IMG/VR virus record: IMGVR_UViG_3300032296_003307
Location: 204,740 to 268,739 of that record
Strand: one strand, 5' to 3'
Length of the DNA stretch: 64,000 bases
The notes beneath the pieces were generated by a model. The model was not told the DNA's origin and did not search any database. It saw nothing but the letters and a program-made list of their open reading frames with translations. A program made the position numbers and the translations under genes. Positions 2,129 through 16,343 of the stretch are shown here, piece by piece (positions within the stretch are counted from its first letter, which is position 1; each line of letters opens with the position of its first letter).

Positions 2129-2922
2129 TACGCAGTTGTTGCAATATCAAATTTTGGATTCATAGCCAATGCGGCTTTTCTTGACCAATCTGACCTTCTA
2201 TTTCCGGCGTTTATATCTGTAAAATAAATTGTTGCTGATTCTTTATCTTTAAAATCAGGTAATTTTTTTGGGTCTTTACCATTCAAGAAAAATGAGATGG
2301 CAACTTTTGCAGATATTTCCGGTTTTTCCAATAATTCAGGATTGTTTTCCAAATCCACGCCCGCTAATTTACCGTAGTGTCTATAATTTGCTCTTCCGGT
2401 AATTCCATTTAAACCACGCCCAACATATTTCCACCCATCACCTGGTTGAGTATTTCCCAATGGAACACCCGAATCCTTACCGTACACACAATCAAAAAAC
2501 TTTGGGTCATCACATTTTAAAGATTTGCACTTGGTCCCTCTAGCACCAAAAATACTAACAATTCTACTATCACTTGTGGTACAATAACCAAATTCTTTAA
2601 CAGCAACAAATCCTGATTCTTTACCAATAACAGATAAAATACCAATCTGTGCATATGGGTTTGTAATACCCATTTTTTCCATTTCTTGGATAGTCATATC
2701 GACCATTTTTGCGGCTTGACCTGAATAACTGTGTTTAATTTTTCCTGTTATTTTATTTTTTCCGATTGATTCGTTTTCTTTTGTTGATGGTGATGTTCCT
2801 CCACTATTGTTAGAAAATCCAAACATTTTTTTCGCCATACCCAACAAACTATCTTCAGGTTGTTCGTTGACACTCATGAGTTCTCTAACTCTATTTACTT
2901 CTTCAATAAGATTTTGTCTCAT
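2128..2922 (-). CDS. Glycoside hydrolase family 19 (chitinase/lysozyme-like) endolysin or virion lysin
   Basis: KESG catalytic region and GNTQPGDGWKYVGRGLNGITGRANY, the GH19 phage lysozyme signature. TATTTAT motif upstream on the sense strand (2927-2933). Confidence 0.85.
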   Translation of the reverse strand: MRQNLIEEVNRVRELMSVNEQPEDSLLGMAKKMFGFSNNSGGTSPSTKENESIGKNKITGKIKHSYSGQAAKMVDMTIQEMEKMGITNPYAQIGILSVIGKESGFVAVKEFGYCTTSDSRIVSIFGARGTKCKSLKCDDPKFFDCVYGKDSGVPLGNTQPGDGWKYVGRGLNGITGRANYRHYGKLAGVDLENNPELLEKPEISAKVAISFFLNGKDPKKLPDFKDKESATIYFTDINAGNRRSDWSRKAALAMNPKFDIATTA

Positions 2923-2970
2923 AACAATAAATAGCTTGTTTGTTTAAAAAATATTCAATACCTTTGTATT

Positions 2971-3138
2971 ATGATGCCACCAAAATATCTACAAGACCTA
3001 CTTGAAATGTATGACAAGAATCTAACAATGTTCGTAGGCGACGTACCTGTTTTGTTTTTCACCACCACAATTGTACGTGAGGAAGAAGAACCAACAAAAG
3101 CACCAAAAGATAATATTTTACAATGTTCAGCGGGATAA
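2971..3138 (+). CDS. Small hypothetical protein, 55 aa (MMPPKYLQDLLEMYDK...CSAG)
   Basis: Read by eye (below the ORF-track cutoff). Preceded by a TAccTTTG -7 element at 2959-2966. Confidence 0.55.
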   Translation: MMPPKYLQDLLEMYDKNLTMFVGDVPVLFFTTTIVREEEEPTKAPKDNILQCSAG

Positions 3139-3193
3139 CTTGACGCTTTTTTAAAATTGGATATATTTATATCAAAACAAATTAAAACTTTCA

Positions 3194-3262
3194 ATGAAAA
3201 CCATTTTCATATTCGGGACACCAGCAACAGAGGGTGATACTTCCAAAGTGGAGATGGGATAA
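3194..3262 (+). CDS. Putative attenuator leader peptide MKTIFIFGTPATEGDTSKVEMG
   Basis: 22 codons after a TATTTAT motif (3164-3170) and an A-rich leader. Its 3' end overlaps the antiterminator strand GAGATGGG. Confidence 0.7.
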   Translation: MKTIFIFGTPATEGDTSKVEMG

Positions 3263-3315
3263 TATTGTCTTTAAGACCTTAAGAAAACCCATCTCAAAAA
3301 GATGGGTTTTTTTTT
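3251..3315 (+). terminator. Intrinsic terminator with competing antiterminator
   Basis: Terminator AAAACCCATCT(3284-3294)/AGATGGGTTTT(3300-3310) plus a T9 run. Alternative 8-bp helix GAGATGGG(3251-3258)/CCCATCTC(3288-3295). Confidence 0.8.
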
Positions 3316-3322
3316 GGTTTAA

Positions 3323-3354
3323 TTTGGCAAATCAAAAATAAAGTTGTAATTTTG
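3323..3354 (+). promoter_or_regulatory. Bacteroidota housekeeping-sigma promoter (-33 TTTG / -7 TAnnTTTG) for the tRNA array
   Basis: TTTG at 3323-3326, 20-nt spacer, TAATTTTG at 3347-3354. Confidence 0.75.
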
Positions 3355-3388
3355 TATCGTTGTTGAAAGAAACATCTGAAACAACAAA

Positions 3389-3400
3389 GTTCTTTGACAT
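3389..3400 (+). promoter_or_regulatory. boxA-like antitermination element
   Basis: GTTCTTTGACAT resembles rrn boxA (TGCTCTTTAACA-type) and lies 15 nt before the first tRNA. Confidence 0.65.
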
Positions 3401-3415
3401 ATTGGAAAAACACAT

Positions 3416-3487
3416 GGCCCCTTCGTCTATCGGCTAGGACATATCCCTTTCACGGATAAAAGACGGGTTCGATTCCCGTAGGGGCTA
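3416..3487 (+). tRNA. tRNA-Glu(UUC)
   Basis: Acceptor GGCCCCT/AGGGGCT, anticodon arm TATCC-CTTTCAC-GGATA, T-loop TTCGATT. Confidence 0.95.
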
Positions 3488-3493
3488 CAAAAC

Positions 3494-3628
3494 ATCTCCG
3501 TAACTGTTAAAACGGTGAGTGGGTAAATGATGGTTGATTGGTCTGACACTACTTATACTAGTTTGTAGAGAAAAGTCAGAGCACTAAACAAGTAATTTAC
3601 AAGATGGGTTCGATTCCCATCGGAGATT
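3494..3628 (+). ncRNA. tRNA-like RNA with a greatly extended central arm
   Basis: Acceptor ATCTCCG/CGGAGAT, T-arm ATGGG-TTCGATT-CCCAT, mini D-arm ACTG/CGGT, nested helices GTAAAT/ATTTAC, TCTGAC/GTCAGA and CTAC/GTAG. Confidence 0.7.
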
Positions 3629-3634
3629 CAAAAT

Positions 3635-3708
3635 GCCACCATAGCTTTAATTGGTAGAGCACCTGACTTGTAATCAGGGGGTTGGCGGTTCGAATCCGTC
3701 TGGTGGCT
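3635..3708 (+). tRNA. tRNA-Thr(UGU)
   Basis: GCCACCA/TGGTGGC acceptor, CCTGA-CTTGTAA-TCAGG anticodon arm. Confidence 0.95.
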
Positions 3709-3757
3709 CAAACTCAAGGAGTAATTAACCTTGAACTGTCAGGTTCGAAACTGACGA

Positions 3758-3849
3758 TTGATTATGGTGTAATAGGGCACACTGGCCTTAGTTGCTTCTT
3801 AACAGAAGTGGACGGGGCTGGGGATTGGGTTCGATTCCCTTTAATCAGC
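3758..3849 (+). ncRNA. tRNA-like RNA with an elongated anticodon arm
   Basis: TTGATTA/TAATCAG acceptor, D-arm GTGT-AATAGG-GCAC, long arm CTGGCC...GCTTCT-TAAC-AGAAGT...GGCTGG, T-arm GGG-TTCGATT-CCC. Confidence 0.7.
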
Positions 3850-3853
3850 AAAT

Positions 3854-4382
3854 GACCCCACAATTAACAGTAGTACTCGACTGTTATGGTGTGTGAACCC
3901 GACTTGAAGTCTTCGGGGCTATGGGGGATAGATACACTTGACGTGAAATTTGTATAACCTCTTATAAACGGGGTTAACCGACATGGGGAAGTTCAGTCGG
4001 GTACATCGGGAACAAGTATGACTGAGTCCCCCATTATGGATTAAGGGGGTTAGGGGCTTTAATTAGTCGTAATACAATCCACAAGTTGTAGAAACACTGG
4101 ACAATTCTACAATATACACTCTTCTTCCGAGTGAGACCAGACACGTAACTATGTGGTAGGGTGAAGATGTCCTGAGGGTAATATCGTTGTTAATTGTAAG
4201 GCTTATGGTCCGAAAGGATAAGTTGAAACCCAAAGGCACAACGGTATGATAGTACAGACCTACCTTGGATGGTTACTATGTTCTGACGAATCTTGGAAAT
4301 ATAGGTAGGGATATTAATTCGCCAACTATTAAAACTTAAAGGTGTTCCTATAATGGCGTAGGGATGATTCAACACCTTTTTT
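3854..4382 (+). ncRNA. Large structured non-coding RNA candidate (~520 nt)
   Basis: No credible ORF, GC content above the flanks, many helices including a long-range 10-bp pairing 3860-3869/4188-4197. Confidence 0.6.
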
Positions 4383-4386
4383 ACAT

Positions 4387-4464
4387 CGCGGGATGGACTG
4401 GAGATGGTACCAGCTGAGTCTCATAAGCTCAATCACGGGGGTTCGAATCCCTCTCCCGCTACCA
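4387..4464 (+). tRNA. tRNA-Met(CAU), atypical (C1.U72 mismatch, encoded CCA)
   Basis: CGCGGGA/TCCCGCT-A-CCA, anticodon arm TGAGT-CTCATAA-GCTCA. Confidence 0.85.
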
Positions 4465-4467
4465 AAT

Positions 4468-4538
4468 CGTGGATTGGTGTAATGGTAACATATTGGGCTC
4501 ATAACCCAAAGTTCCGAGTTCGAGTCTCGGGTCCGCAA
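4468..4538 (+). tRNA. Initiator tRNA-fMet(CAU)
   Basis: C1.A72 mismatch and three consecutive G-C pairs in TTGGG-CTCATAA-CCCAA. Confidence 0.92.
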
Positions 4539-4544
4539 CTAAAT

Positions 4545-4584
4545 GCCGGAGGACTCCCATGATAGTCCCATGGGTCCGGCTCCA
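4545..4584 (+). ncRNA. CCA-ended tRNA minihelix-like element
   Basis: GCCGGA/TCCGGC stem stacked on CCCATG/CATGGG with a 7-nt loop, followed by T-CCA. Confidence 0.55.
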
Positions 4585-4585
4585 T

Positions 4586-4657
4586 GCGGGTGTCGTATAA
4601 AGGCTATTACTTCAGCCTTCCAAGCTGAAGATGGGAGTTCGATTCTCCCCACCCGCT
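4586..4657 (+). tRNA. tRNA-Gly(UCC)
   Basis: GCGGGTG/CACCCGC-T, TCAGC-CTTCCAA-GCTGA. Confidence 0.95.
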
Positions 4658-4662
4658 CAAAA

Positions 4663-4735
4663 GCGAGAGTGGCTCAGTTGGTAGAGCATGACCTTGCCAA
4701 GGTCAGGGTCGCCAGTTCGAACCTGGTCTCTCGCT
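4663..4735 (+). tRNA. tRNA-Gly(GCC)
   Basis: GCGAGAG/CTCTCGC-T, TGACC-TTGCCAA-GGTCA. Confidence 0.95.
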
Positions 4736-4805
4736 CGAATGTGAATCTTAAAAAGGGCACTTCCGTCTCGTTGAGCGGCACGCTGAGCCCGGATTCACAT
4801 ATCAC

Positions 4806-4877
4806 GGTCTCATAGTTAATCGGCTATAATATCGCCCTGTCACGGCGAAGTGCCGGGTTCGATTCCCGGTGGGACCG
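4806..4877 (+). tRNA. tRNA-Asp(GUC)
   Basis: GGTCTCA/TGGGACC-G, TCGCC-CTGTCAC-GGCGA. Confidence 0.95.
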
Positions 4878-5075
4878 CAAAATTCAGTCAGGGTCGAGCC
4901 ACGTTGTGCCACGACTGAATGATAGGTAAGGAAGGACAAGAGGTGGCCGTGACTACTCCTTACCGTTAATTTATGTATTTATTGGTATGTTTAAACGACT
5001 ACTAAAATACTTGGAATCAATAGAACAACACAGAATGAACGCCATTATTTTTGGTGGAAAAGGGTTGTTGTAGTT

Positions 5076-5149
5076 GGGCTGTTAGCTCAGATGGCTAGAG
5101 CACCTGCCTTGCACGCAGGGGGTCGAGAGTTCGAGTCTCTCACGGTCCA
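5076..5149 (+). tRNA. tRNA-Ala(UGC)
   Basis: G3.U70 pair, CCTGC-CTTGCAC-GCAGG. Confidence 0.95.
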
Positions 5150-5233
5150 CAAGATGAGTTTCCCTACACCTTTGGGTTAGTAACTAGTTAAAGGGGGACA
5201 AAAGTGGTATACAAGTCCACGACTCATCCACTT

Positions 5234-5310
5234 CGGGATGTTGGGGAGCCCGGTCACCCCGCCTGCTTTGGGAGCAGGAGAACTCGCAGGTTCGAATCCT
5301 GCCATCCCGA
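5234..5310 (+). tRNA. tRNA-Pro(UGG)
   Basis: CGGGATG/CATCCCG-A, CCTGC-TTTGGGA-GCAGG. Confidence 0.95.
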
Positions 5311-5354
5311 CAAAATTTTTTCAATATGTCAAAAACTTTTCTTATCTTTGTAAT

Positions 5355-5663
5355 ATGAAACAAAAAATTAATAAACTCGGTGCTTTGGTATCTGTAATGA
5401 TATGGTTTGTTCTTATAACCATCTTAGGTATCTTTTTGACTTCTTGTGGTAAGCCAAAGAACAGGATTGAAAAAGGTGATATTGTTCAGAAGTGTCAGAT
5501 TGATTCTATTAATGTTTTACCACAGCATTCAACAATCGAACCTGACAGGAAGTGTGAATATTTTACAAGTTGTGGAAGTAGAATTGTGTCACATGAAGGC
5601 GCTTTCAGGGTTGGTGATACTGTGACTTACGTATATAAGAAATCTAATAGTCAGAAAAACTGA
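5355..5663 (+). CDS. Putative lipoprotein
   Basis: The likely start is ATG 5355, after TAtcTTTG at 5343-5350. Hydrophobic stretch followed by lipobox LTSC. Confidence 0.7.
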   Translation: MKQKINKLGALVSVMIWFVLITILGIFLTSCGKPKNRIEKGDIVQKCQIDSINVLPQHSTIEPDRKCEYFTSCGSRIVSHEGAFRVGDTVTYVYKKSNSQKN

Positions 5664-6300
5664 TTAACTTTTTTATACGGTTCATAGATTCTGTCATACC
5701 GTCTTGGTAATCATATTTTCCAACATAAACGTCAGGATATTGTACGGTAATTGGATATTTTTTGCCGATTCTTTCCATAATATCATCCTGAATCGCTTCA
5801 GGACTATTCTCACTTAAATCGTCAAGTTCTGATTGAAACATACTTACTTTTTCTTCAAATTCAAAATCACCAAATTCTAAATTTGGGTAATATTTTTCAA
5901 CCACTTCATCCATTTTATTTGTATTTAAATCTCCAATAGTAACTACCGTTCCGTCGGCCATTTTTACAGTGCTGTTTGGATAAATTAAAACAGAATCTAA
6001 TTCTAAATCGTACGAAATTAAAATAGATGAAGTACGTATTGGTTCAATAGCATAATTCGTAACTTTATAAATTAATTTGGCGTAAGGGGTTTCTACAATT
6101 CCGGGGTTTTCAATTACCTCAGAAATAAGTTTAAAATAGTTTTTTTCACCACCGTAATATTCAACAATATAAGGTAAAAAATCTTCCAAGCCCCAACTTT
6201 CTTTCCCTATAAATCTTGAAACTTGATTTAAATTATATACATCAACACCTCTGGCATCCCAAAGTTTAAATAGTACTTTTTTTTCTTGGTCTGTTAACAT
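5644..6300 (-). CDS. Hypothetical protein, paralog of 6302-7084
   Basis: Shares KKxLxxxWxxxG, YYGG and PxST motifs and the C-terminal ESxxRIKxLISFSDY with its neighbour. Confidence 0.75.
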   Translation of the reverse strand: MLTDQEKKVLFKLWDARGVDVYNLNQVSRFIGKESWGLEDFLPYIVEYYGGEKNYFKLISEVIENPGIVETPYAKLIYKVTNYAIEPIRTSSILISYDLELDSVLIYPNSTVKMADGTVVTIGDLNTNKMDEVVEKYYPNLEFGDFEFEEKVSMFQSELDDLSENSPEAIQDDIMERIGKKYPITVQYPDVYVGKYDYQDGMTESMNRIKKLISFSDY

Positions 6301-6301
6301 A

Positions 6302-7084
6302 TTAATAATCTGAAAAAGATATTAAATTTTTTATTCTAATTACTGACTCGTTCAGATTTCCCAAATCAAAATCAACAATTTCAACTTTTGGTATATTTGG
6401 TTTTGGTGTAGGTGATGTTTGAACAAAAAATTTTTCTCGGGCAATTTTATTTAAGTAATCACTGGCGTTTTCTTTAATAGTTTCAATTAGTTCCTTAAAA
6501 TCTCCGTATATTTCTTTTTGATATTGTATATATTCTTCGCTACCAACTTCAATTTGAGGTAAATATTTTTCCATAAGTTGTTTGATTCCTAAATTTTTGA
6601 TTTCCAAAACAGGAATATATGTTGTTTCCCTGTTAAGGGTTGTGAACTTAAGAGTTGAACTTGGATGTAAATAAATTTTTTTCAAATACATTTTTGTGTT
6701 TTTAGGAACGCCATTATCATAGTAGGTTTGTACTAATTGTATGTCACCTAATTTTAAAAAAATGGTACCCATTGGGTTAATTAACGAACGGTCTTTTTTT
6801 GTTTCCTTTTTATAGACACCAAACTCCTGTAATATTTTTTCTTTGTATTTTTCTAATCCGCCGTAGTAATCAAAAAATAAATCGGTATAATATTCAGGTT
6901 GTAATTTATCTTTTGTGTAATAACCCACAAAACGTAAATCGCTTTCTAACCTATTTGGGTCAAAACCTTTTTTATTCCAAATAATGGATAGGATTTTTTT
7001 CTGATTTGGTGTTAATCTAGGTTCTCTTAAACCAAAAATTTTTTTTAGGTCAAATTCGTTAATTAGAGAAATTTTATTACCCAT
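6302..7084 (-). CDS. Hypothetical protein, paralog of 5644-6300
   Basis: Same shared motifs as 5644-6300. TATTTAT on the sense strand at 7091-7097. Confidence 0.75.
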   Translation of the reverse strand: MGNKISLINEFDLKKIFGLREPRLTPNQKKILSIIWNKKGFDPNRLESDLRFVGYYTKDKLQPEYYTDLFFDYYGGLEKYKEKILQEFGVYKKETKKDRSLINPMGTIFLKLGDIQLVQTYYDNGVPKNTKMYLKKIYLHPSSTLKFTTLNRETTYIPVLEIKNLGIKQLMEKYLPQIEVGSEEYIQYQKEIYGDFKELIETIKENASDYLNKIAREKFFVQTSPTPKPNIPKVEIVDFDLGNLNESVIRIKNLISFSDY

Positions 7085-7149
7085 GATTTTATAAATATTT
7101 GTTTTTTTAATTAAACTGATATATATTTGTAAGGTAATGTAATAAAGAT

Positions 7150-7278
7150 ATGGGAAAGTTCAGTTATGATGACTTTAACGAGGAAGAACAACCACGTAAA
7201 GGGTCAAGAAACGACAAAAAAGAGAGCAAGAAACCTAAACTTACAGACAAAACAAAAAAACCTAAAAAACCGAAATAA
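7150..7278 (+). CDS. Small Lys-rich basic protein (42 aa)
   Basis: MGKFSYDDFNEEEQPRKG...KKPKKPK, downstream of the promoter TTTG(7098-7101)-N20-TATATTTG(7122-7129). Confidence 0.6.
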   Translation: MGKFSYDDFNEEEQPRKGSRNDKKESKKPKLTDKTKKPKKPK

Positions 7279-7280
7279 CA

Positions 7281-7481
7281 ATGTCAAACAAAGAAAAAAA
7301 ACCAATTAATGCGGAAAATCTACAGAAGATTTCAAACGGAAATGAAATCCACATTAATATTGGAAAAAAATTCTTTGATATGGGTGATGTTGAGGTCATA
7401 GAAATACAAAGACCCAAAGAACCCGTCTACGGTGAAGATGAGTGGGATAATATACACGGAGATATAGTACACTTCACCTAA
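7281..7481 (+). CDS. Small hypothetical protein
   Basis: 66-aa ORF starting 2 nt after the upstream stop. Confidence 0.6.
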   Translation: MSNKEKKPINAENLQKISNGNEIHINIGKKFFDMGDVEVIEIQRPKEPVYGEDEWDNIHGDIVHFT

Positions 7482-7488
7482 TCAATAT

Positions 7489-7562
7489 AGACGGGTGGCG
7501 CAATAGGTTAGCGCAGGATTCTTATACAATCAAGGTTACGGGTTCAAGTCCCGTCTCGTCTA
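7489..7562 (+). tRNA. tRNA-Ile(UAU)
   Basis: AGACGGG/CTCGTCT-A, anticodon loop CTTATAC, T-loop TTCAAGT. Confidence 0.88.
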
Positions 7563-7566
7563 CTTC

Positions 7567-7640
7567 GGGCCTTTAGCTCAGTCGGTCAGAGCAGGACACT
7601 CATAATGTCAAGGTCGTAGGTTCGAACCCTACAAGGCCCA
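7567..7640 (+). tRNA. tRNA-CAU (probably Ile2/lysidine type; elongator Met not excluded)
   Basis: GGGCCTT/AAGGCCC-A, anticodon loop CTCATAA, paired 1:72. Confidence 0.85.
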
Positions 7641-7691
7641 CAAATTATAATTTTATTCCTTTTTTTATTGAGTTATCCATATTTATTTATT

Positions 7692-8318
7692 ATGGATTTT
7701 ACTCAGATTATTATTACCCTGTTAACTTCAATTACTTCTGTTATTGTTGCACTTATAACCGCAGGGTTTATTCGTAGAAAAGATGACAAAGCAAAGGCGG
7801 AAAAATCTAAAAAACAATTAATAGACCAAATTCAAAAAGACGAGTTGATTCACGCAACTCTAAGGGAAATAAGAAGAAAATATAACGCTGATAGAGTATT
7901 CATAACTCAGTTCCATAACGGAGGTACGTTTTATACTAATTCACCAATGCAGAAAGCGTCGGTAACATACGAAAGATGTTCAGATGGATTAAAAAGAATT
8001 GCTGACCAATTTCAGAATTATTTGGTGAGCAATCTTTCTTGGTACGCATCTAAAGTACTTAAAAACCAAGCTTTTTTTTATGACATTGATGAAGTTGTTG
8101 ACGATATAATAATGAAAAGTGTTTTTAAAAATTACTCTACGTGGGCACACGCCGCGGTTCCAATAATGGATAATAATAAAAATCCCATAGCGGTACTTGC
8201 CATGGATTGGGTCATATCAGAACTACCTGTTGAGTATGTCGATGATGAAGATTTTAACGATGAGTTTACCGAAGAATTTACAAAAGACGGAAATTCCTTA
8301 AAAACATACTTAATGTGA
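7692..8318 (+). CDS. Membrane-anchored GAF-like protein, candidate holin
   Basis: Start MDFTQ after TATTTAT 7680-7686. One N-terminal TM helix, then a GAF-like pattern (NADRVFITQFHNG...AVPI...PIAVLAMD). Confidence 0.55.
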   Translation: MDFTQIIITLLTSITSVIVALITAGFIRRKDDKAKAEKSKKQLIDQIQKDELIHATLREIRRKYNADRVFITQFHNGGTFYTNSPMQKASVTYERCSDGLKRIADQFQNYLVSNLSWYASKVLKNQAFFYDIDEVVDDIIMKSVFKNYSTWAHAAVPIMDNNKNPIAVLAMDWVISELPVEYVDDEDFNDEFTEEFTKDGNSLKTYLM

Positions 8319-9686: not shown

Positions 9687-9691
9687 GTTTG

Positions 9692-10072
9692 TGGAGGTGG
9701 AGGGTATCGAACCCTCGTCCAGTCTACCTTGACTGTAAGGTACTACACGTTTAGGTTAACATTTGCTAATGTTCCAAACTTCACAATTCCCTTATTTTAT
9801 AGTGGTTCGGTTTACTGAGAACTAATCCTCCACTTGTTTCTTTTAAGATAGAAACCACACCTCTAAAGGACTTATGTTCCTAGGTTAATGTCCTCCCGAC
9901 CTGAGTGTTATAGCGATTAGGCTACAACTGAAGCCTCTTCACGGAACAAACCGCAAGCTGCCATGTTATTTAAAACGTTGCCGTCTAATTGGTTAAATCA
10001 GTTTTTAATGAGTTAATTCAGCTCATACGTGCACCTTACCTTCAAAAATACCTGTCAAATCCAGTCACCCCC
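9692..10072 (-). ncRNA. ssrA: tmRNA
   Basis: 5' GGGGGTGACTGGATTTGAC, 3' GAGGG-TTCGATA-CCCTC-CACCTCC-A with G3.U70. Tag ORF 9982-9917 encodes (A)GNVLNNMAACGLFREEASVVA. Confidence 0.92.
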
Positions 10073-14299: not shown

Positions 14300-16306
14300 T
14301 TAAACTTTTTCTATCTTAATTATTTCGTCAAATTTCAAGACGTAATTTTCACCTTCAATTACATTACCAACCAAGTATTCTTCTGAAATATAATCTTCAA
14401 CTTCATCTTGAATCGCTCTTTTAATCGGTCTGGCACCGAATGTTTCGTCAAACCCGACTTTGGCAATATGTTCAATTATGGTATCGTCAAATTCAAAGTT
14501 AAGTTTTAATTCTGTTAACCTGTCTTTAAGTTTTACTATTTCCAATTTAACAATTTTTTCAATTTCGGGTTGTTTCAAAGAGTTAAAAACAATAACTTCA
14601 TCAATACGATTTAAAAATTCAGGAGAGAAATAATTTTTCATTTCTTTTTGAAGAATTTGACGCTTGTACTCTTCTTGTGTTGAAGAGCTTGATGCGGTTG
14701 AAAAACCAATCTGAGTTCCAAAATCTTGTAATTTTTTAACCCCTAAGTTTGAAGTCATAATAATCAAACAATTTTTAAAGTTGATTTTTCTACCTAAAGA
14801 ATCAGTTAAATGACCTTCATCTAACATCTGTAACAATGTGTTAAAGATTTCTTTGTTTGCCTTTTCAACTTCATCAAACAGAATTACCGAATAAGGTTTG
14901 TTCTTAACTTGTTCGGTTAACTGTCCACCTTCATCGTAACCAACATAACCAGGAGGAGCACCAATCAATTTGGAAATGGTGTGTTTTTCTTGAAACTCAG
15001 ACATATCTACACGGATAAGATTGTCTTCACTACCAAAGATTTGTTTTGCCAATTGTTTTGCCAAGTGAGTCTTACCAACACCTGTTGAACCCAAGAAAAT
15101 GAATGAACCGATAGGTTTATTTGGGTCTTTAATTCCCAACCTATTTCTGCGAATTGATTTTGCAATTTTGGTAACCGCCTCATCTTGTCCAATAACTTTG
15201 TCCATCAGAGATTTGTCTAAGGCAATTAAGTTTGTTTTATCATCAACAGATATTTTAGAAACAGGAATTTTAGTCATAGAAGAAACGACATCCAAAACAA
15301 GTTCAGGTAAAATCTCGCGTTTCTTTTCTGACATTTCTATCTCATACCTTTCCTTTTCATTTTCTAACTTACTGGCAATTTTTTTCTCTTTGTTCCGTAA
15401 TTCTGCCGCCTCTTCATATTTTTGTCTTTTCACAACATCTTTTTTCTTTTCACTTATTTCTCTGAGTTGTGCGGTAAGTTTTTCTATGATTTCAGGTACT
15501 TTGGCCTCTACTTGTGCACGAGCACCAACCTCATCCATAATGTCAAACGCTTTGTCAGGAAACTCTCTGTCGGTAATGTATCTATCAGCCAAATTAACAC
15601 AAAGCTCAAGTACTTCATCAGAATAACTTACTTTGTGATATTCTTGATACTTTGTTCTTAGATTTTTAAGAATTAATAATGTTTCTTTTTTTGATGGTGA
15701 ATCAACAACTACTTTTTGAAATCTGCGTTCTAACGCACCGTCTTTTTCAAAGTTTGTTCTGTATTCATCTAGTGTTGTTGCTCCGATACATTGAATTTCA
15801 CCACGAGCAAGGGCGGGTTTAAATATATTAGAGGCGTCCATAGAGCCCGATGCGTTACCCGCACCAACTATAGTATGAATTTCATCGATAAAAACAATAA
15901 TTTCGGGGTTTTTTGACAATTCTTCAATAATTACTTTTAATCTTTCTTCAAACTGACCACGATATTTTGTTCCAGCAACAATTGATGTCATATCCAATAG
16001 AACAATCCTCTTACTCAATAAGTTACGTGGACAATCACCATTAAAAATTTTCATGGCGAGACCTTCAACAATTGCGGTTTTACCACAACCTGGCTCTCCT
16101 ATGATTATTGGATTGTTTTTCTTTCTTCTTGAAAGAATTTGAGCAATTCGTTGTATTTCACGTTCTCTACCAATTACAGGGTCTAATCTACCTTCTGACG
16201 CCAATTTTATTAGGTCTTTTGAGAAGTTATCCAATACGGGTGTAGATGAACTGTTACGTCTACTTTGCGGTTTTACATTTTCGTTGTCGTCCATTGATTC
16301 AATCAT
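14300..16306 (-). CDS. clpC: ClpC/ClpA-type AAA+ chaperone lacking the Clp N-terminal domain
   Basis: Two Walker A motifs (GEPGCGKT, GSTGVGKT), pore loops KYRG and GYVG, UVR-like middle domain and IGF ClpP-docking loop. Start MIES follows TATATTTG at 16318-16311. Confidence 0.92.
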   Translation of the reverse strand: MIESMDDNENVKPQSRRNSSSTPVLDNFSKDLIKLASEGRLDPVIGREREIQRIAQILSRRKKNNPIIIGEPGCGKTAIVEGLAMKIFNGDCPRNLLSKRIVLLDMTSIVAGTKYRGQFEERLKVIIEELSKNPEIIVFIDEIHTIVGAGNASGSMDASNIFKPALARGEIQCIGATTLDEYRTNFEKDGALERRFQKVVVDSPSKKETLLILKNLRTKYQEYHKVSYSDEVLELCVNLADRYITDREFPDKAFDIMDEVGARAQVEAKVPEIIEKLTAQLREISEKKKDVVKRQKYEEAAELRNKEKKIASKLENEKERYEIEMSEKKREILPELVLDVVSSMTKIPVSKISVDDKTNLIALDKSLMDKVIGQDEAVTKIAKSIRRNRLGIKDPNKPIGSFIFLGSTGVGKTHLAKQLAKQIFGSEDNLIRVDMSEFQEKHTISKLIGAPPGYVGYDEGGQLTEQVKNKPYSVILFDEVEKANKEIFNTLLQMLDEGHLTDSLGRKINFKNCLIIMTSNLGVKKLQDFGTQIGFSTASSSSTQEEYKRQILQKEMKNYFSPEFLNRIDEVIVFNSLKQPEIEKIVKLEIVKLKDRLTELKLNFEFDDTIIEHIAKVGFDETFGARPIKRAIQDEVEDYISEEYLVGNVIEGENYVLKFDEIIKIEKV

Positions 16307-16343
16307 ACCACAAATATACAACTATGTTTCATATTATCAACTA

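What the first reader, a model, noticed from the sequence alone, without database searches (positions are those of the whole stretch)
3854..4382. ~520-nt structured ncRNA candidate inside the tRNA array
Seen: no plausible ORF. Helices include ACAATTAACA(3860-3869)/TGTTAATTGT(4188-4197), CCCGACT(3898-3904)/AGTCGGG(3995-4001), TATGACTGA(4017-4025)/TTAGTCGTA(4063-4071), TTGTAGAA(4086-4093)/TTCTACAA(4105-4112), CCTACCT(4259-4265)/AGGTAGG(4303-4309) with an alternative partner GGTAGG at 4155-4160, and AAAGGTGTT(4338-4346)/AACACCTTT(4371-4379); GAAA and UUCG-like loops are present. Established: large ncRNAs such as GOLLD and ROOL occur next to phage tRNAs. I cannot match this one to a known family by eye; it may be one RNA or several.
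Basis: partly seen in the sequence, partly recalled or inferred. Interest (0 to 1): 0.75.

Follow-up and report, generated by a model that had tools for sequence, protein, structure and literature searches.

The report
New ornate RNA of freshwater phages
The 530-base gap between two tRNA genes of this 269-kb freshwater phage encodes a real, intricately folded and very abundant non-coding RNA that fits no catalogued family; it is a new example of the same puzzling kind as the giant phage RNAs GOLLD and ROOL.

Summary
Window 3850-4386 (+) is one conserved non-coding RNA. I recovered 100 full-length copies (83 distinct, 410-546 nt, 64-94% identical) from viral and freshwater metagenome contigs. 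Two core patterns found none in 185,579 prokaryotic genomes. Nearly all tRNAs in those loci (800 of 802) lie on the RNA's strand, and in 50 of 80 loci a tRNA starts within 6 nt of its 3' end. Covariation is strong: in the 3' domain 33 of 35 pairs show compensatory changes, including two pseudoknots. A 150-nt core is almost invariant. Four metatranscriptomes hold the RNA at word depths up to about 5000, while flanking phage protein genes read about 0. No Rfam 15 family matches. GOLLD, ROOL and RNase P models fail, yet GOLLD itself scores about 300 bits in seven related phages and is missing from this genome. Verdict: a new family of large ornate phage tRNA-array RNA. It is probably cut out of the tRNA transcript by tRNA-processing enzymes. 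Its biochemical role is unknown; an RNA-only assembly or a ribozyme remain open.

The parts
3850..4386 (+). Whole RNA unit (537 nt in this phage), flush between two tRNA genes
   Evidence: nhmmer/BLAST homology covers query 1-534 in other phages. Conservation starts at about 3852 (AAGACCCCAC) and ends after the U tract.
3758..3849 (+). Upstream tRNA-like gene (ARAGORN tRNA-Leu UAG, 92 nt). Its 3' end would set the RNA's 5' end.
   Evidence: Not matched by Rfam tRNA. ARAGORN with introns calls it tRNA-Val with a 21-nt intron.
3856..3926 (+). 5' domain: predicted closing helix 3856-3860/3922-3926 (invariant, so untested) enclosing hairpins 3865-3870/3881-3886 and 3898-3902/3913-3918
   Evidence: RNAalifold. 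Hairpin 3865-70/3881-86 is 100% paired with 4 compensatory pairs; 3900-02/3913-15 has 2 compensatory pairs.
3929..4027 (+). Optional module A (about 100 nt, present in about a third of members): hairpins 3956-3961/3970-3975 and 3978-3982/3996-4000
   Evidence: Absent in the 410- and 460-nt size classes. RNA-library variants replace 3928-4026 with 20 nt or skip 3937-4024. Both hairpins covary.
4028..4180 (+). Nearly invariant core (mean column identity 89%). Hairpins: 4028-32/4045-49; 4055-58/4065-68 (loop UUAAUU with invariant UUAA); 4085-93/4105-13 (11-nt loop ACACUGGACAA); 4117-21/4129-33 (loop UUCUUCC); 4136-43/4152-57 (loop CGUAACUA). Candidate pseudoknot 4038-42/4076-80.
   Evidence: 98.2% of cells paired, 8 pairs with compensatory change against 2.6 in shuffles, 16 of 34 pairs never vary. 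RNA-library variants 4141 A>C and 4154 T>G occur at similar depths. L126 changes both sides of 4040/4078.
4181..4247 (+). Variable module B: a hairpin of 0-75 nt in several unrelated versions, closed by 4181-4185/4243-4247
   Evidence: The closing helix has 5 of 5 compensatory pairs. An RNA contig skips 4180-4249.
4254..4382 (+). 3' domain: helix 4259-65/4303-09 enclosing hairpin 4281-86/4293-98, then a linker, then the terminator-like terminal hairpin 4338-45/4372-79 with inner hairpin 4346-50/4359-63 and a U tract at 4377-4382
   Evidence: the count of structure pairs: 95.8% paired against 69.8% in shuffles (0 of 500), 33 of 35 pairs compensatory, slid controls at most 51%.
4288..4370 (+). 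Pseudoknot or kissing pairing 1: hairpin loop 4288-4292 (GAAUC) with the internal loop of the terminal hairpin, 4366-4370 (GAUUC)
   Evidence: 100% paired, 5 of 5 pairs compensatory. Four versions occur: GAAUC/GAUUC, CUCUC/GAGAG, GUAUC/GAUAC, ACUUC/GAAGU.
4320..4358 (+). Pseudoknot 2: linker 4320-4323 (CGCC) with the loop of the inner terminal hairpin, 4355-4358 (GGCG)
   Evidence: 95% paired, 4 of 4 pairs compensatory. At least six versions occur.
4145..4276 (+). Candidate long-range pairing between two invariant loop segments, GUAACU 4145-4150 and GGUUAC 4271-4276. It would tie the core to the 3' domain.
   Evidence: Both 6-mers are invariant in 53 representatives and are perfectly complementary. 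Read directly from the sequence; covariation cannot test it.
4387..4464 (+). Downstream tRNA-Met. Its 5' end (the RNase P site) would set the RNA's 3' end.
   Evidence: In 50 of 80 homologous loci a tRNA starts -2 to +6 nt from the end of the RNA.

Best explanation
This is a stable, trans-acting non-coding RNA of a previously uncatalogued family. It is 410-546 nt across members and 537 nt here. A subset of a large clade of uncultured freshwater T4-like jumbo phages carries it.

Shown:
- It is conserved as one collinear unit.
- It lies inside tRNA arrays on the tRNA strand.
- It folds into at least 12 helices plus two covariation-proven pseudoknot or kissing pairings.
- It has an almost invariant 150-nt core and two swappable peripheral modules.
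- It is present in environmental RNA far above neighbouring phage genes.

Inferred:
- It is transcribed with the tRNAs as one precursor.
- It is released by the host's tRNA-processing nucleases: RNase P at the 5' end of the abutting downstream tRNA, and RNase Z or RNase E after the upstream tRNA.
- The doubly knotted, terminator-like 3' hairpin with its U tail protects the 3' end and lets the RNA accumulate.
- It acts through its shape, like GOLLD and ROOL, which occupy the same genomic niche. GOLLD occurs in the same phage clade. The action may be as an RNA-only multimer in which one or both 'pseudoknots' are bridges between molecules, serving the phage's own translation or tRNA programme during infection.

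I put the structured, processed, stable ncRNA part at about 0.9, and the multimeric GOLLD/ROOL-like mode of action at about 0.3.
For: Family and conservation: pattern scans and nhmmer gave 122 hits, 100 of them full length and 83 distinct.

Structure: RNAalifold predicts 83 pairs, 42 with compensatory changes. In the 3' domain 33 of 35 pairs are compensatory, 0 of 500 shuffles reach the observed values, and slid controls reach at most 51%. In the core 8 pairs are compensatory against 2.6 expected. My own shuffle and slide controls agree.

Strand: 800 of 802 tRNAs in the oriented loci are co-directional. Many G-U pairs occur that would be A-C mismatches on the other strand.

Processing context: a downstream tRNA starts within -2 to +6 nt in 50 of 80 loci, and the tRNA's identity varies (Glu, Phe, Ile, Asp, Met).

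Expression: word depth over 3867-4228 is 5190 and 1664 in run X15 and 364 and 297 in X17. Flanking coding bins 2600-3323 and 5315-7486 read 0-4. Six metatranscriptomes from different studies hold 33-43% of its words.

Class: GOLLD and ROOL are phage RNAs near tRNA islands, highly abundant, of unknown function, and form RNA-only cages. In both, pairings first found by covariation and read as tertiary contacts proved to be intermolecular bridges (PMC12286853). GOLLD scores 298-328 bits in seven related phage records, four of which also carry this RNA.
Against: - No experiment or read-level end mapping: contigs give no strand, no ends and no true abundance (caveats).
- Single-sequence folding energy is not better than shuffles.
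- The core is too conserved for covariation to fix its fold; 16 of 34 core pairs never vary.
- Nothing shows multimerisation.
- The RNA is dispensable for close relatives: three complete or 93% complete relatives lack it (with a positive control).
- No conserved partner protein was found.
- The terminal hairpin plus U tract could act as a terminator rather than a protective cap.
- In about a third of loci no tRNA abuts the 3' end, so RNase P cannot be the only way the end is made.
Confidence: 0.7

Rival explanations
1. It is a ribozyme. The invariant 150-nt core would be an active site, for instance a phage-specific tRNA-processing or RNA-ligating/cleaving activity suited to a genome with 30 tRNA genes.
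For: Extreme conservation of unpaired core nucleotides and loops is typical of catalytic cores. The RNA is constantly embedded among tRNAs. Peripheral modules vary around a fixed core, as in RNase P and group I introns.
Against: No match to RNase P, group I/II intron or any self-cleaving ribozyme model in Rfam 15 at E<=10. No 5'/3' closing P1 and no GGAAAGUCC-type P4 strand by eye. Related complete phages do without it. GOLLD and ROOL also have conserved cores and no known catalysis.
Confidence: 0.12
2. It is mainly a cis-acting element of the tRNA operon. It would be a leaky intrinsic terminator, a processing platform or a spacer that sets the expression of the downstream tRNAs. The abundant RNA would then be a by-product.
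For: A 3' hairpin followed by a U tract sits directly before a tRNA in most loci. Other gaps in the same array also hold conserved hairpins.
Against: Terminating or spacing needs 40 nt, not 410-546 nt with an invariant 150-nt core and two pseudoknots. The downstream gene differs between loci (five different tRNAs, or ClpP-like or other genes), so there is no constant regulated target. The terminator scan does not call the hairpin because its loop exceeds 8 nt.
Confidence: 0.08
3. The stretch is two or more independent small RNAs, for example the 5' domain plus core and a separate 3' pseudoknotted RNA, that merely travel together.
For: Both proven pseudoknots lie within the 3' domain (4254-4382). 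No covariation links it to the core. Summed depth in RNA runs falls sharply after 4228.
Against: Every copy not cut by a contig end is collinear and complete; one (L118) has a diverged 3' hairpin. One RNA contig runs from 3859 through the core into the 3' domain (record 18). Invariant complementary loops GUAACU and GGUUAC could join the two parts. The depth drop is expected because the 3' domain is more variable, so fewer relatives' contigs reach the 88% likeness threshold.
Confidence: 0.08
4. It is a very divergent member of GOLLD or ROOL rather than a separate family.
For: Same niche (phage tRNA islands), similar size range to ROOL, and the same phage clade as lake-type GOLLD.
Against: GOLLD RF02032 finds nothing in this genome at E<=10 but scores 298-328 bits in seven relatives, four of which carry this RNA as a second, separate locus; in two the distance could be read, 10 and 29 kb away. 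nhmmer with this family's profile finds nothing in three GOLLD loci including 1.5 kb flanks that cover the GOLLD 5' region. ROOL RF03087 finds nothing, though without a positive control.
Confidence: 0.04

Closest known systems
GOLLD RNA (Rfam RF02032)
   Same: A large, ornate, pseudoknotted phage RNA found in or near tRNA islands, with a conserved part plus variable parts, abundant and of unknown function. It is lake-derived, and it occurs in the very clade of freshwater jumbo phages that carries this RNA.
   Different: No sequence or covariance-model similarity. This RNA is 410-546 nt, whereas many GOLLD members exceed 800 nt. It is a separate locus in phages that have both. This window's phage has this RNA and no GOLLD. 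GOLLD's 14-mer cage is demonstrated; nothing is known of this RNA's quaternary state.
ROOL RNA (Rfam RF03087)
   Same: Roughly the same size (the Rfam ROOL model has 574 positions), multiple pseudoknots, phage or prophage location near tRNAs, and rRNA-like abundance without a known partner protein.
   Different: No model match. According to the literature ROOL comes from rumen and Firmicutes prophages, whereas this family was found only on freshwater and other aquatic viral and metagenome contigs and in no prokaryotic genome.
Phage T4 stable RNAs C and D ('species 1 and 2') of the tRNA gene cluster (from my own knowledge of the T4 literature, not checked here)
   Same: Non-tRNA stable RNAs encoded inside the tRNA cluster of a T4-type phage, co-transcribed with the tRNAs, released by tRNA-processing enzymes, and of unknown function. 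The phage here has a T4-type major head protein.
   Different: The T4 RNAs are about 120-140 nt and simple. No similarity was tested or is expected. This RNA is four times larger, with an invariant core and pseudoknots.
Bacterial RNase P RNA (RF00010/RF00011)
   Same: A 350-400-nt RNA with an invariant core and variable peripheral helices, functionally tied to tRNA 5' ends. A short resemblance, GGUAGGGUGAAG against GGUAAGGGUGAAAG of the E. coli RNA, was seen by eye.
   Different: No model match in the whole genome, while the same search hits 11 of 14 control genomes. No terminal P1 pairing and no P4 signature. The resemblance is a recalled lead only.

Membership tests
GOLLD (RF02032) | Match to the covariance model of the conserved 3' region (gathering score 150 bits) | tested here: not met
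   0 matches at E<=10 in the whole 268,739-bp genome. The region alone against all of Rfam gives nothing. The same model scores 298-328 bits in seven related phages. BLAST of three GOLLD loci against this genome finds only flanks and the tmRNA.
GOLLD (RF02032) | Phage-encoded and located in or near tRNA islands | tested here: met
ROOL (RF03087) | Match to the covariance model (gathering score 99.1 bits) | tested here: not met
   0 matches at E<=10 and none in five relatives. Caveat: no positive control rang anywhere.
Bacterial RNase P RNA (RF00010, also RF00011 within cmscan) | Match to the covariance model; P4 pseudoknot built from the conserved GGAAAGUCC and ACAGAA-CCGGCUUA strands; P1 closing the 5' and 3' ends | tested here: not met
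   (0 matches; controls ring in 11 of 14 genomes).. The motifs are absent by eye, and the 3' end is a local hairpin.
tRNA / tRNA-like / tmRNA (CL00001) | Cloverleaf or T-arm plus acceptor mimic detected by ARAGORN or Rfam | tested here: not met
   No call inside 3850-4386.
Group I / group II introns and self-cleaving ribozymes in Rfam 15 | Covariance-model match; for a tRNA intron, flanking exon halves | tested here: not met
   cmscan at E<=10 returns only three chance-level hits: PutA thermometer, CRISPR-DR8 and RFPL3-AS1. The flanks are complete tRNAs.
Intrinsic (Rho-independent) terminator | G+C-rich hairpin directly followed by a U tract, ending transcription | tested here: inconclusive
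   Hairpin 4338-4379 plus UUUUUU is present and conserved. The scan tool did not call it because of its long loop. A tRNA follows within 6 nt in most loci. Termination itself cannot be tested here.
Informal class 'large ornate phage RNAs of tRNA islands' (GOLLD, ROOL) | More than 400 nt, many covarying helices with pseudoknots, no ORF, phage-encoded beside tRNAs, very abundant | tested here: met
Informal class 'large ornate phage RNAs of tRNA islands' (GOLLD, ROOL) | Forms RNA-only homo-oligomeric cages | not testable with these tools
   Needs native gels, mass photometry or cryo-EM. The only lead: the pairings found by covariation could be intermolecular, as they were in ROOL and GOLLD.

The most novel reading that the evidence does not exclude
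The RNA is a third, structurally independent self-assembling phage RNA, an RNA-only multimer or cage. Its covarying loop-loop pairings (4288-92/4366-70, 4320-23/4355-58) and its invariant complementary or palindromic loops (GUAACU/GGUUAC; UUAA) would be bridges between molecules. Alternatively it is a new natural ribozyme class acting on the phage's tRNA/translation system. Either way, one clade of abundant lake phages would carry two unrelated giant RNAs (this one and GOLLD). That would give a natural comparison for working out what such RNAs do.
Probability: 0.25. Interest if true: 0.9.

Novelty: new variant of a known kind. Interest (0 to 1): 0.72.

Why it matters
Only a handful of bacterial or phage RNAs of this size and intricacy are known (OLE, GOLLD, ROOL, HEARO, raiA), and none of the phage ones has a known function. 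This family adds an independent example with:
- an alignment of 83 distinct sequences,
- clear modular architecture,
- two proven pseudoknots,
- very high abundance in lake and river metatranscriptomes.

Closely related phages exist with GOLLD only, with this RNA only (the window's phage), or with both. That natural presence/absence matrix could make the long-open question of what giant phage RNAs do testable by comparative genomics and, once a host is found, by genetics. The compact 410-nt versions are ready targets for cryo-EM and ribozyme assays.

Tried and rejected
- Rfam 15 at gathering score and at E<=10, on the window, on the array and on the region alone: only tRNAs, the tmRNA and chance hits.
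- Single-family searches of the whole genome for GOLLD, ROOL and RNaseP_bact_a: nothing. My first guess of RF01998 for GOLLD was the wrong accession.
- Thermodynamic folding of either strand: z = 0.03 and -0.99, uninformative.
- blastn against GenBank phages: no match.
- A first covariation scan that counted G-U/G-C switches as variation gave mostly noise. I replaced it with a scan that counts only double-sided changes.
- Search for a conserved partner protein near the RNA: an unknown ORF of about 140 aa lies just upstream in 32 of 87 loci but has no homologue in this genome. An antisense 'ORF family' is an artefact of RNA conservation.
- RNase P-like reading of GGUAGGGUGAAG, and hammerhead-like reading of CUGAGG...GA: rejected by eye and by the models.
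- G-quadruplex reading of the G runs: run 4045-4049 pairs with 4028-4032, with a compensatory change at 4031/4046.
- Bacteroidota-type promoter (TTTG-N-TAnnTTTG) at 3323-3354 as a clue to the host: the pattern is not enriched in the window, 8 found against 5.9 expected. The host stays unknown.
- Literature searches: no description of this family. A survey of IMG/VR intergenic regions (PMC10690425) reports motifs of about 67 nt on average and may contain pieces of this RNA; I could not check its supplementary models.

Full report
WHERE IT IS. The window is the last 64 kb of a 268,739-bp IMG/VR virus record rated 100% complete. The record has a T4-type terminase, portal and major head protein. 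It carries 30 tRNA genes and a tmRNA at window 9689-10072 on the minus strand. The finding fills the gap between ARAGORN tRNA-Leu (3758-3849) and tRNA-Met (4387-4464), within an array of ten + strand tRNAs at 3416-5311.

THE OBSERVATION. No + strand ORF of 40 aa or more lies inside the stretch. G+C is about 42% against about 32% for the genome. The helices visible in this one sequence are not more than chance gives: the minimum free energy equals that of dinucleotide shuffles (z = 0.03 on +, -0.99 on -). The case therefore rests on comparison with homologues.

NOT A KNOWN FAMILY.
- cmscan against all 4227 Rfam 15 families found only tRNAs and the tmRNA at gathering score.
- Inside 3845-4390 at E<=10 it found three chance-level hits.
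- Whole-genome searches with GOLLD (RF02032), ROOL (RF03087) and RNaseP_bact_a (RF00010) were empty. The RNase P search rang in 11 of 14 control genomes.
- GenBank phages hold no blastn match.
- I found no paper that describes the family. A survey of IMG/VR intergenic motifs averaging 67 nt (PMC10690425) may contain fragments of it.

A FAMILY EXISTS.
- Exact-pattern scans with conserved core words found 36 viral contigs and 91 metagenome stretches, nearly all named freshwater or lake.
- Two independent core patterns found nothing in 185,579 species-representative prokaryotic genomes.
- nhmmer recovered 100 full-length copies, 83 of them distinct and 64-94% identical to the window. Lengths cluster near 410, 460, 485 and 540 nt.
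- Homology covers the whole unit from about 3852 to the U tract at 4382.
- The length classes come from two modules. Module A (3929-4027) is present or absent. Module B (4186-4242) is a hairpin in several unrelated versions, or a mere tetraloop-sized turn.

STRUCTURE.
- RNAalifold on 53 representatives (alignment A1) predicts 83 pairs, 42 with compensatory double changes.
- An all-against-all scan for stacked pairs with double-sided changes recovered the local helices and two long-range pairings that RNAalifold cannot draw.
- Pairing 1 joins the loop of hairpin 4281-4298 (4288-4292) to the internal loop of the terminal hairpin (4366-4370). It occurs in four versions: GAAUC/GAUUC, CUCUC/GAGAG, GUAUC/GAUAC and ACUUC/GAAGU.
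- Pairing 2 joins linker 4320-4323 to the loop of the inner terminal hairpin (4355-4358). It occurs in at least six versions.
- The counting tool on the 3' domain (A3, six helices including both pseudoknots) gives 95.8% standard pairs against 69.8% in shuffles. 33 of 35 pairs have changes on both sides. None of 500 shuffles reached the observed value on any of the five measures. Slid registers reach at most 51%. My own controls on 83 sequences agree.
- The core (4028-4182, A2) has 89% mean column identity. Its five hairpins are 98.2% paired, with 8 compensatory pairs against 2.6 in shuffles, but 16 of 34 pairs never vary. The core fold is therefore supported only in part.
- A candidate third pseudoknot (GGAUU 4038-42 with AAUCC 4076-80) has one compensatory case, in L126.
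- A fourth (GUAACU 4145-50 with GGUUAC 4271-76) joins two invariant loops and cannot be tested.
- Frequent G-U pairs and the orientation of 800 of 802 neighbouring tRNAs assign the RNA to the + strand.

Three are confirmed: 4086-93/4105-12, 4259-65/4303-09 and 4338-46/4371-79. Three are not conserved: 3860-69/4188-97, 3898-3904/3995-4001 and 4017-25/4063-71. One arm of each lies in a dispensable module, and competing local helices covary instead.

EXPRESSION.
- Twenty public runs hold near-identical words, among them six metatranscriptomes from different freshwater and riverine studies.
- I laid four RNA runs on window 2600-8000. The summed word depth over 3867-4228 was 5190 and 1664 (X15), 364 and 297 (X17), 1.7 and 42 (X16), and 5 and 26 (X19).
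- The protein-coding flanks (2600-3323, 5315-7486) read 0, apart from 0.65-4 in one run. DNA carry-over therefore cannot explain the signal.
- The RNA contigs are family variants. They replace 3928-4026 with 20 nt, skip 3937-4024 or skip 4180-4249. These are exactly modules A and B.
- They carry 4141 A>C together with 4154 T>G at similar depths, which is a compensatory pair in hairpin 4136-4157.
- One 417-nt RNA contig runs from 3859 through the core into the 3' domain.
- Caveats: contigs have no strand and no true ends, and depths sum over relatives.

CONTEXT AND PROCESSING.
- In 50 of 80 loci with a downstream tRNA, that tRNA starts -2 to +6 nt from the end of the RNA. Its identity varies (Glu, Phe, Ile, Asp, Met).
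- Upstream, a tRNA ends within 3 nt in seven loci and about 64 nt away in ten.
- This fits release from a polycistronic tRNA precursor by RNase P (3' end) and RNase Z or E (5' end). That is an inference from established tRNA-processing biology, not something shown here.
- The terminal hairpin with its U tract looks like a terminator, but it is locked by both pseudoknots. I infer that it caps and stabilises the 3' end.
- No partner protein is conserved. An unknown ORF of about 140 aa precedes the RNA in 32 of 87 loci but has no homologue in this genome.

THE PHAGE CLADE AND GOLLD.
- The major head protein has at least 598 relatives among viral contigs; the best 80 are 73-90% identical.
- The nearest cultured phages infect Microcystis (43%) and Flavobacterium (41%).
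- Three complete or 93% complete relatives (321, 296 and 272 kb) lack the RNA. The same search finds it in four known carriers. It is therefore an accessory gene of a sub-clade.
- Unexpectedly, GOLLD scores 298-328 bits over its full model in seven related records. Four of them also carry this RNA; where both positions were listed it lies 10 and 29 kb away.
- The window's own genome has no GOLLD.
- This family's profile finds nothing in three GOLLD loci including their 5' flanks.
- So one clade of lake phages carries two unrelated giant RNAs in all combinations.

INTERPRETATION.
- What is shown: a conserved, modular, pseudoknotted, abundant, phage-only RNA inside tRNA arrays.
- What I infer: it is cut from the tRNA transcript, stabilised by its knotted 3' end, and acts through its shape as GOLLD and ROOL are thought to do.
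- In both of those RNAs, pairings first detected by covariation turned out to be bridges between subunits of RNA-only cages (PMC12286853). The two pairings found here may equally be inter- rather than intramolecular.
- A ribozyme function is the main rival. A purely cis-acting terminator or spacer, several separate RNAs, or a divergent GOLLD/ROOL are less likely for the reasons given under each.
- It works like GOLLD and ROOL in every testable respect of context and architecture, but it fails their membership tests. I file it as a new family of the same kind.

Noticed in passing
whole genome G000 (window = G000:204740-268739); relatives G001-G003, G006-G008, G010: GOLLD RNA (RF02032) scores 298-328 bits in seven related jumbo-phage records but is absent from this 100%-complete genome. 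In G007 it lies about 1 kb from the tmRNA. In this genome the corresponding side of the tmRNA holds protein genes instead.
   Followed up: partly
window 9689-10072 (-): Full-length phage-encoded tmRNA (99.5 bits, Rfam RF00023). ARAGORN did not call it.
   Followed up: no
window 3489-3634 (+): A 146-nt tRNA-like element: 7-bp acceptor stem (3494-3500/3621-3627), D-arm-like hairpin and a perfect T arm, but with about 86 nt of structured insert where the anticodon arm should be. It matches 15 related loci at 84-99% identity and is not called by ARAGORN or Rfam.
   Followed up: partly
window 3758-3849 (+): The 92-nt 'tRNA-Leu' directly upstream of the RNA is odd. Its anticodon sits at position 32, ARAGORN with introns recalls it as tRNA-Val with a 21-nt intron, and the Rfam tRNA model does not match it.
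   Followed up: no
window 5151-5233 and 4879-4965 (+): Two more conserved non-tRNA spacers in the array. 5151-5233 is about 90% identical to stretches that ARAGORN calls 'tRNA-???' with a 2-base anticodon in L005 and L007. A 69-87-nt piece of 4879-4965 recurs in 10 loci.
   Followed up: no
L032:548-982 (+) and 31 other loci, ending about 8 nt before the RNA: A conserved ORF of 124-144 aa with no Pfam or PHROG family lies immediately upstream of the RNA, on the same strand, in 32 of 87 loci. It has no homologue in the window's genome.
   Followed up: partly
window 14300-16321 (-); L078:9174-9905 (+): The phage encodes a Lon-like ATP-dependent protease (phrog_4871, E 2e-236). In 12 related loci a ClpP-family protease gene starts within about 10 nt (more in a few loci) after the RNA.
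   Followed up: no
window 3323-3354 (+): A TTTG-N20-TAATTTTG match to the Bacteroidota promoter consensus sits just upstream of the first tRNA, after a strong terminator at 3281-3313. The pattern is not enriched in the window (8 found against 5.9 expected), so it gives no reliable clue to the host.
   Followed up: yes
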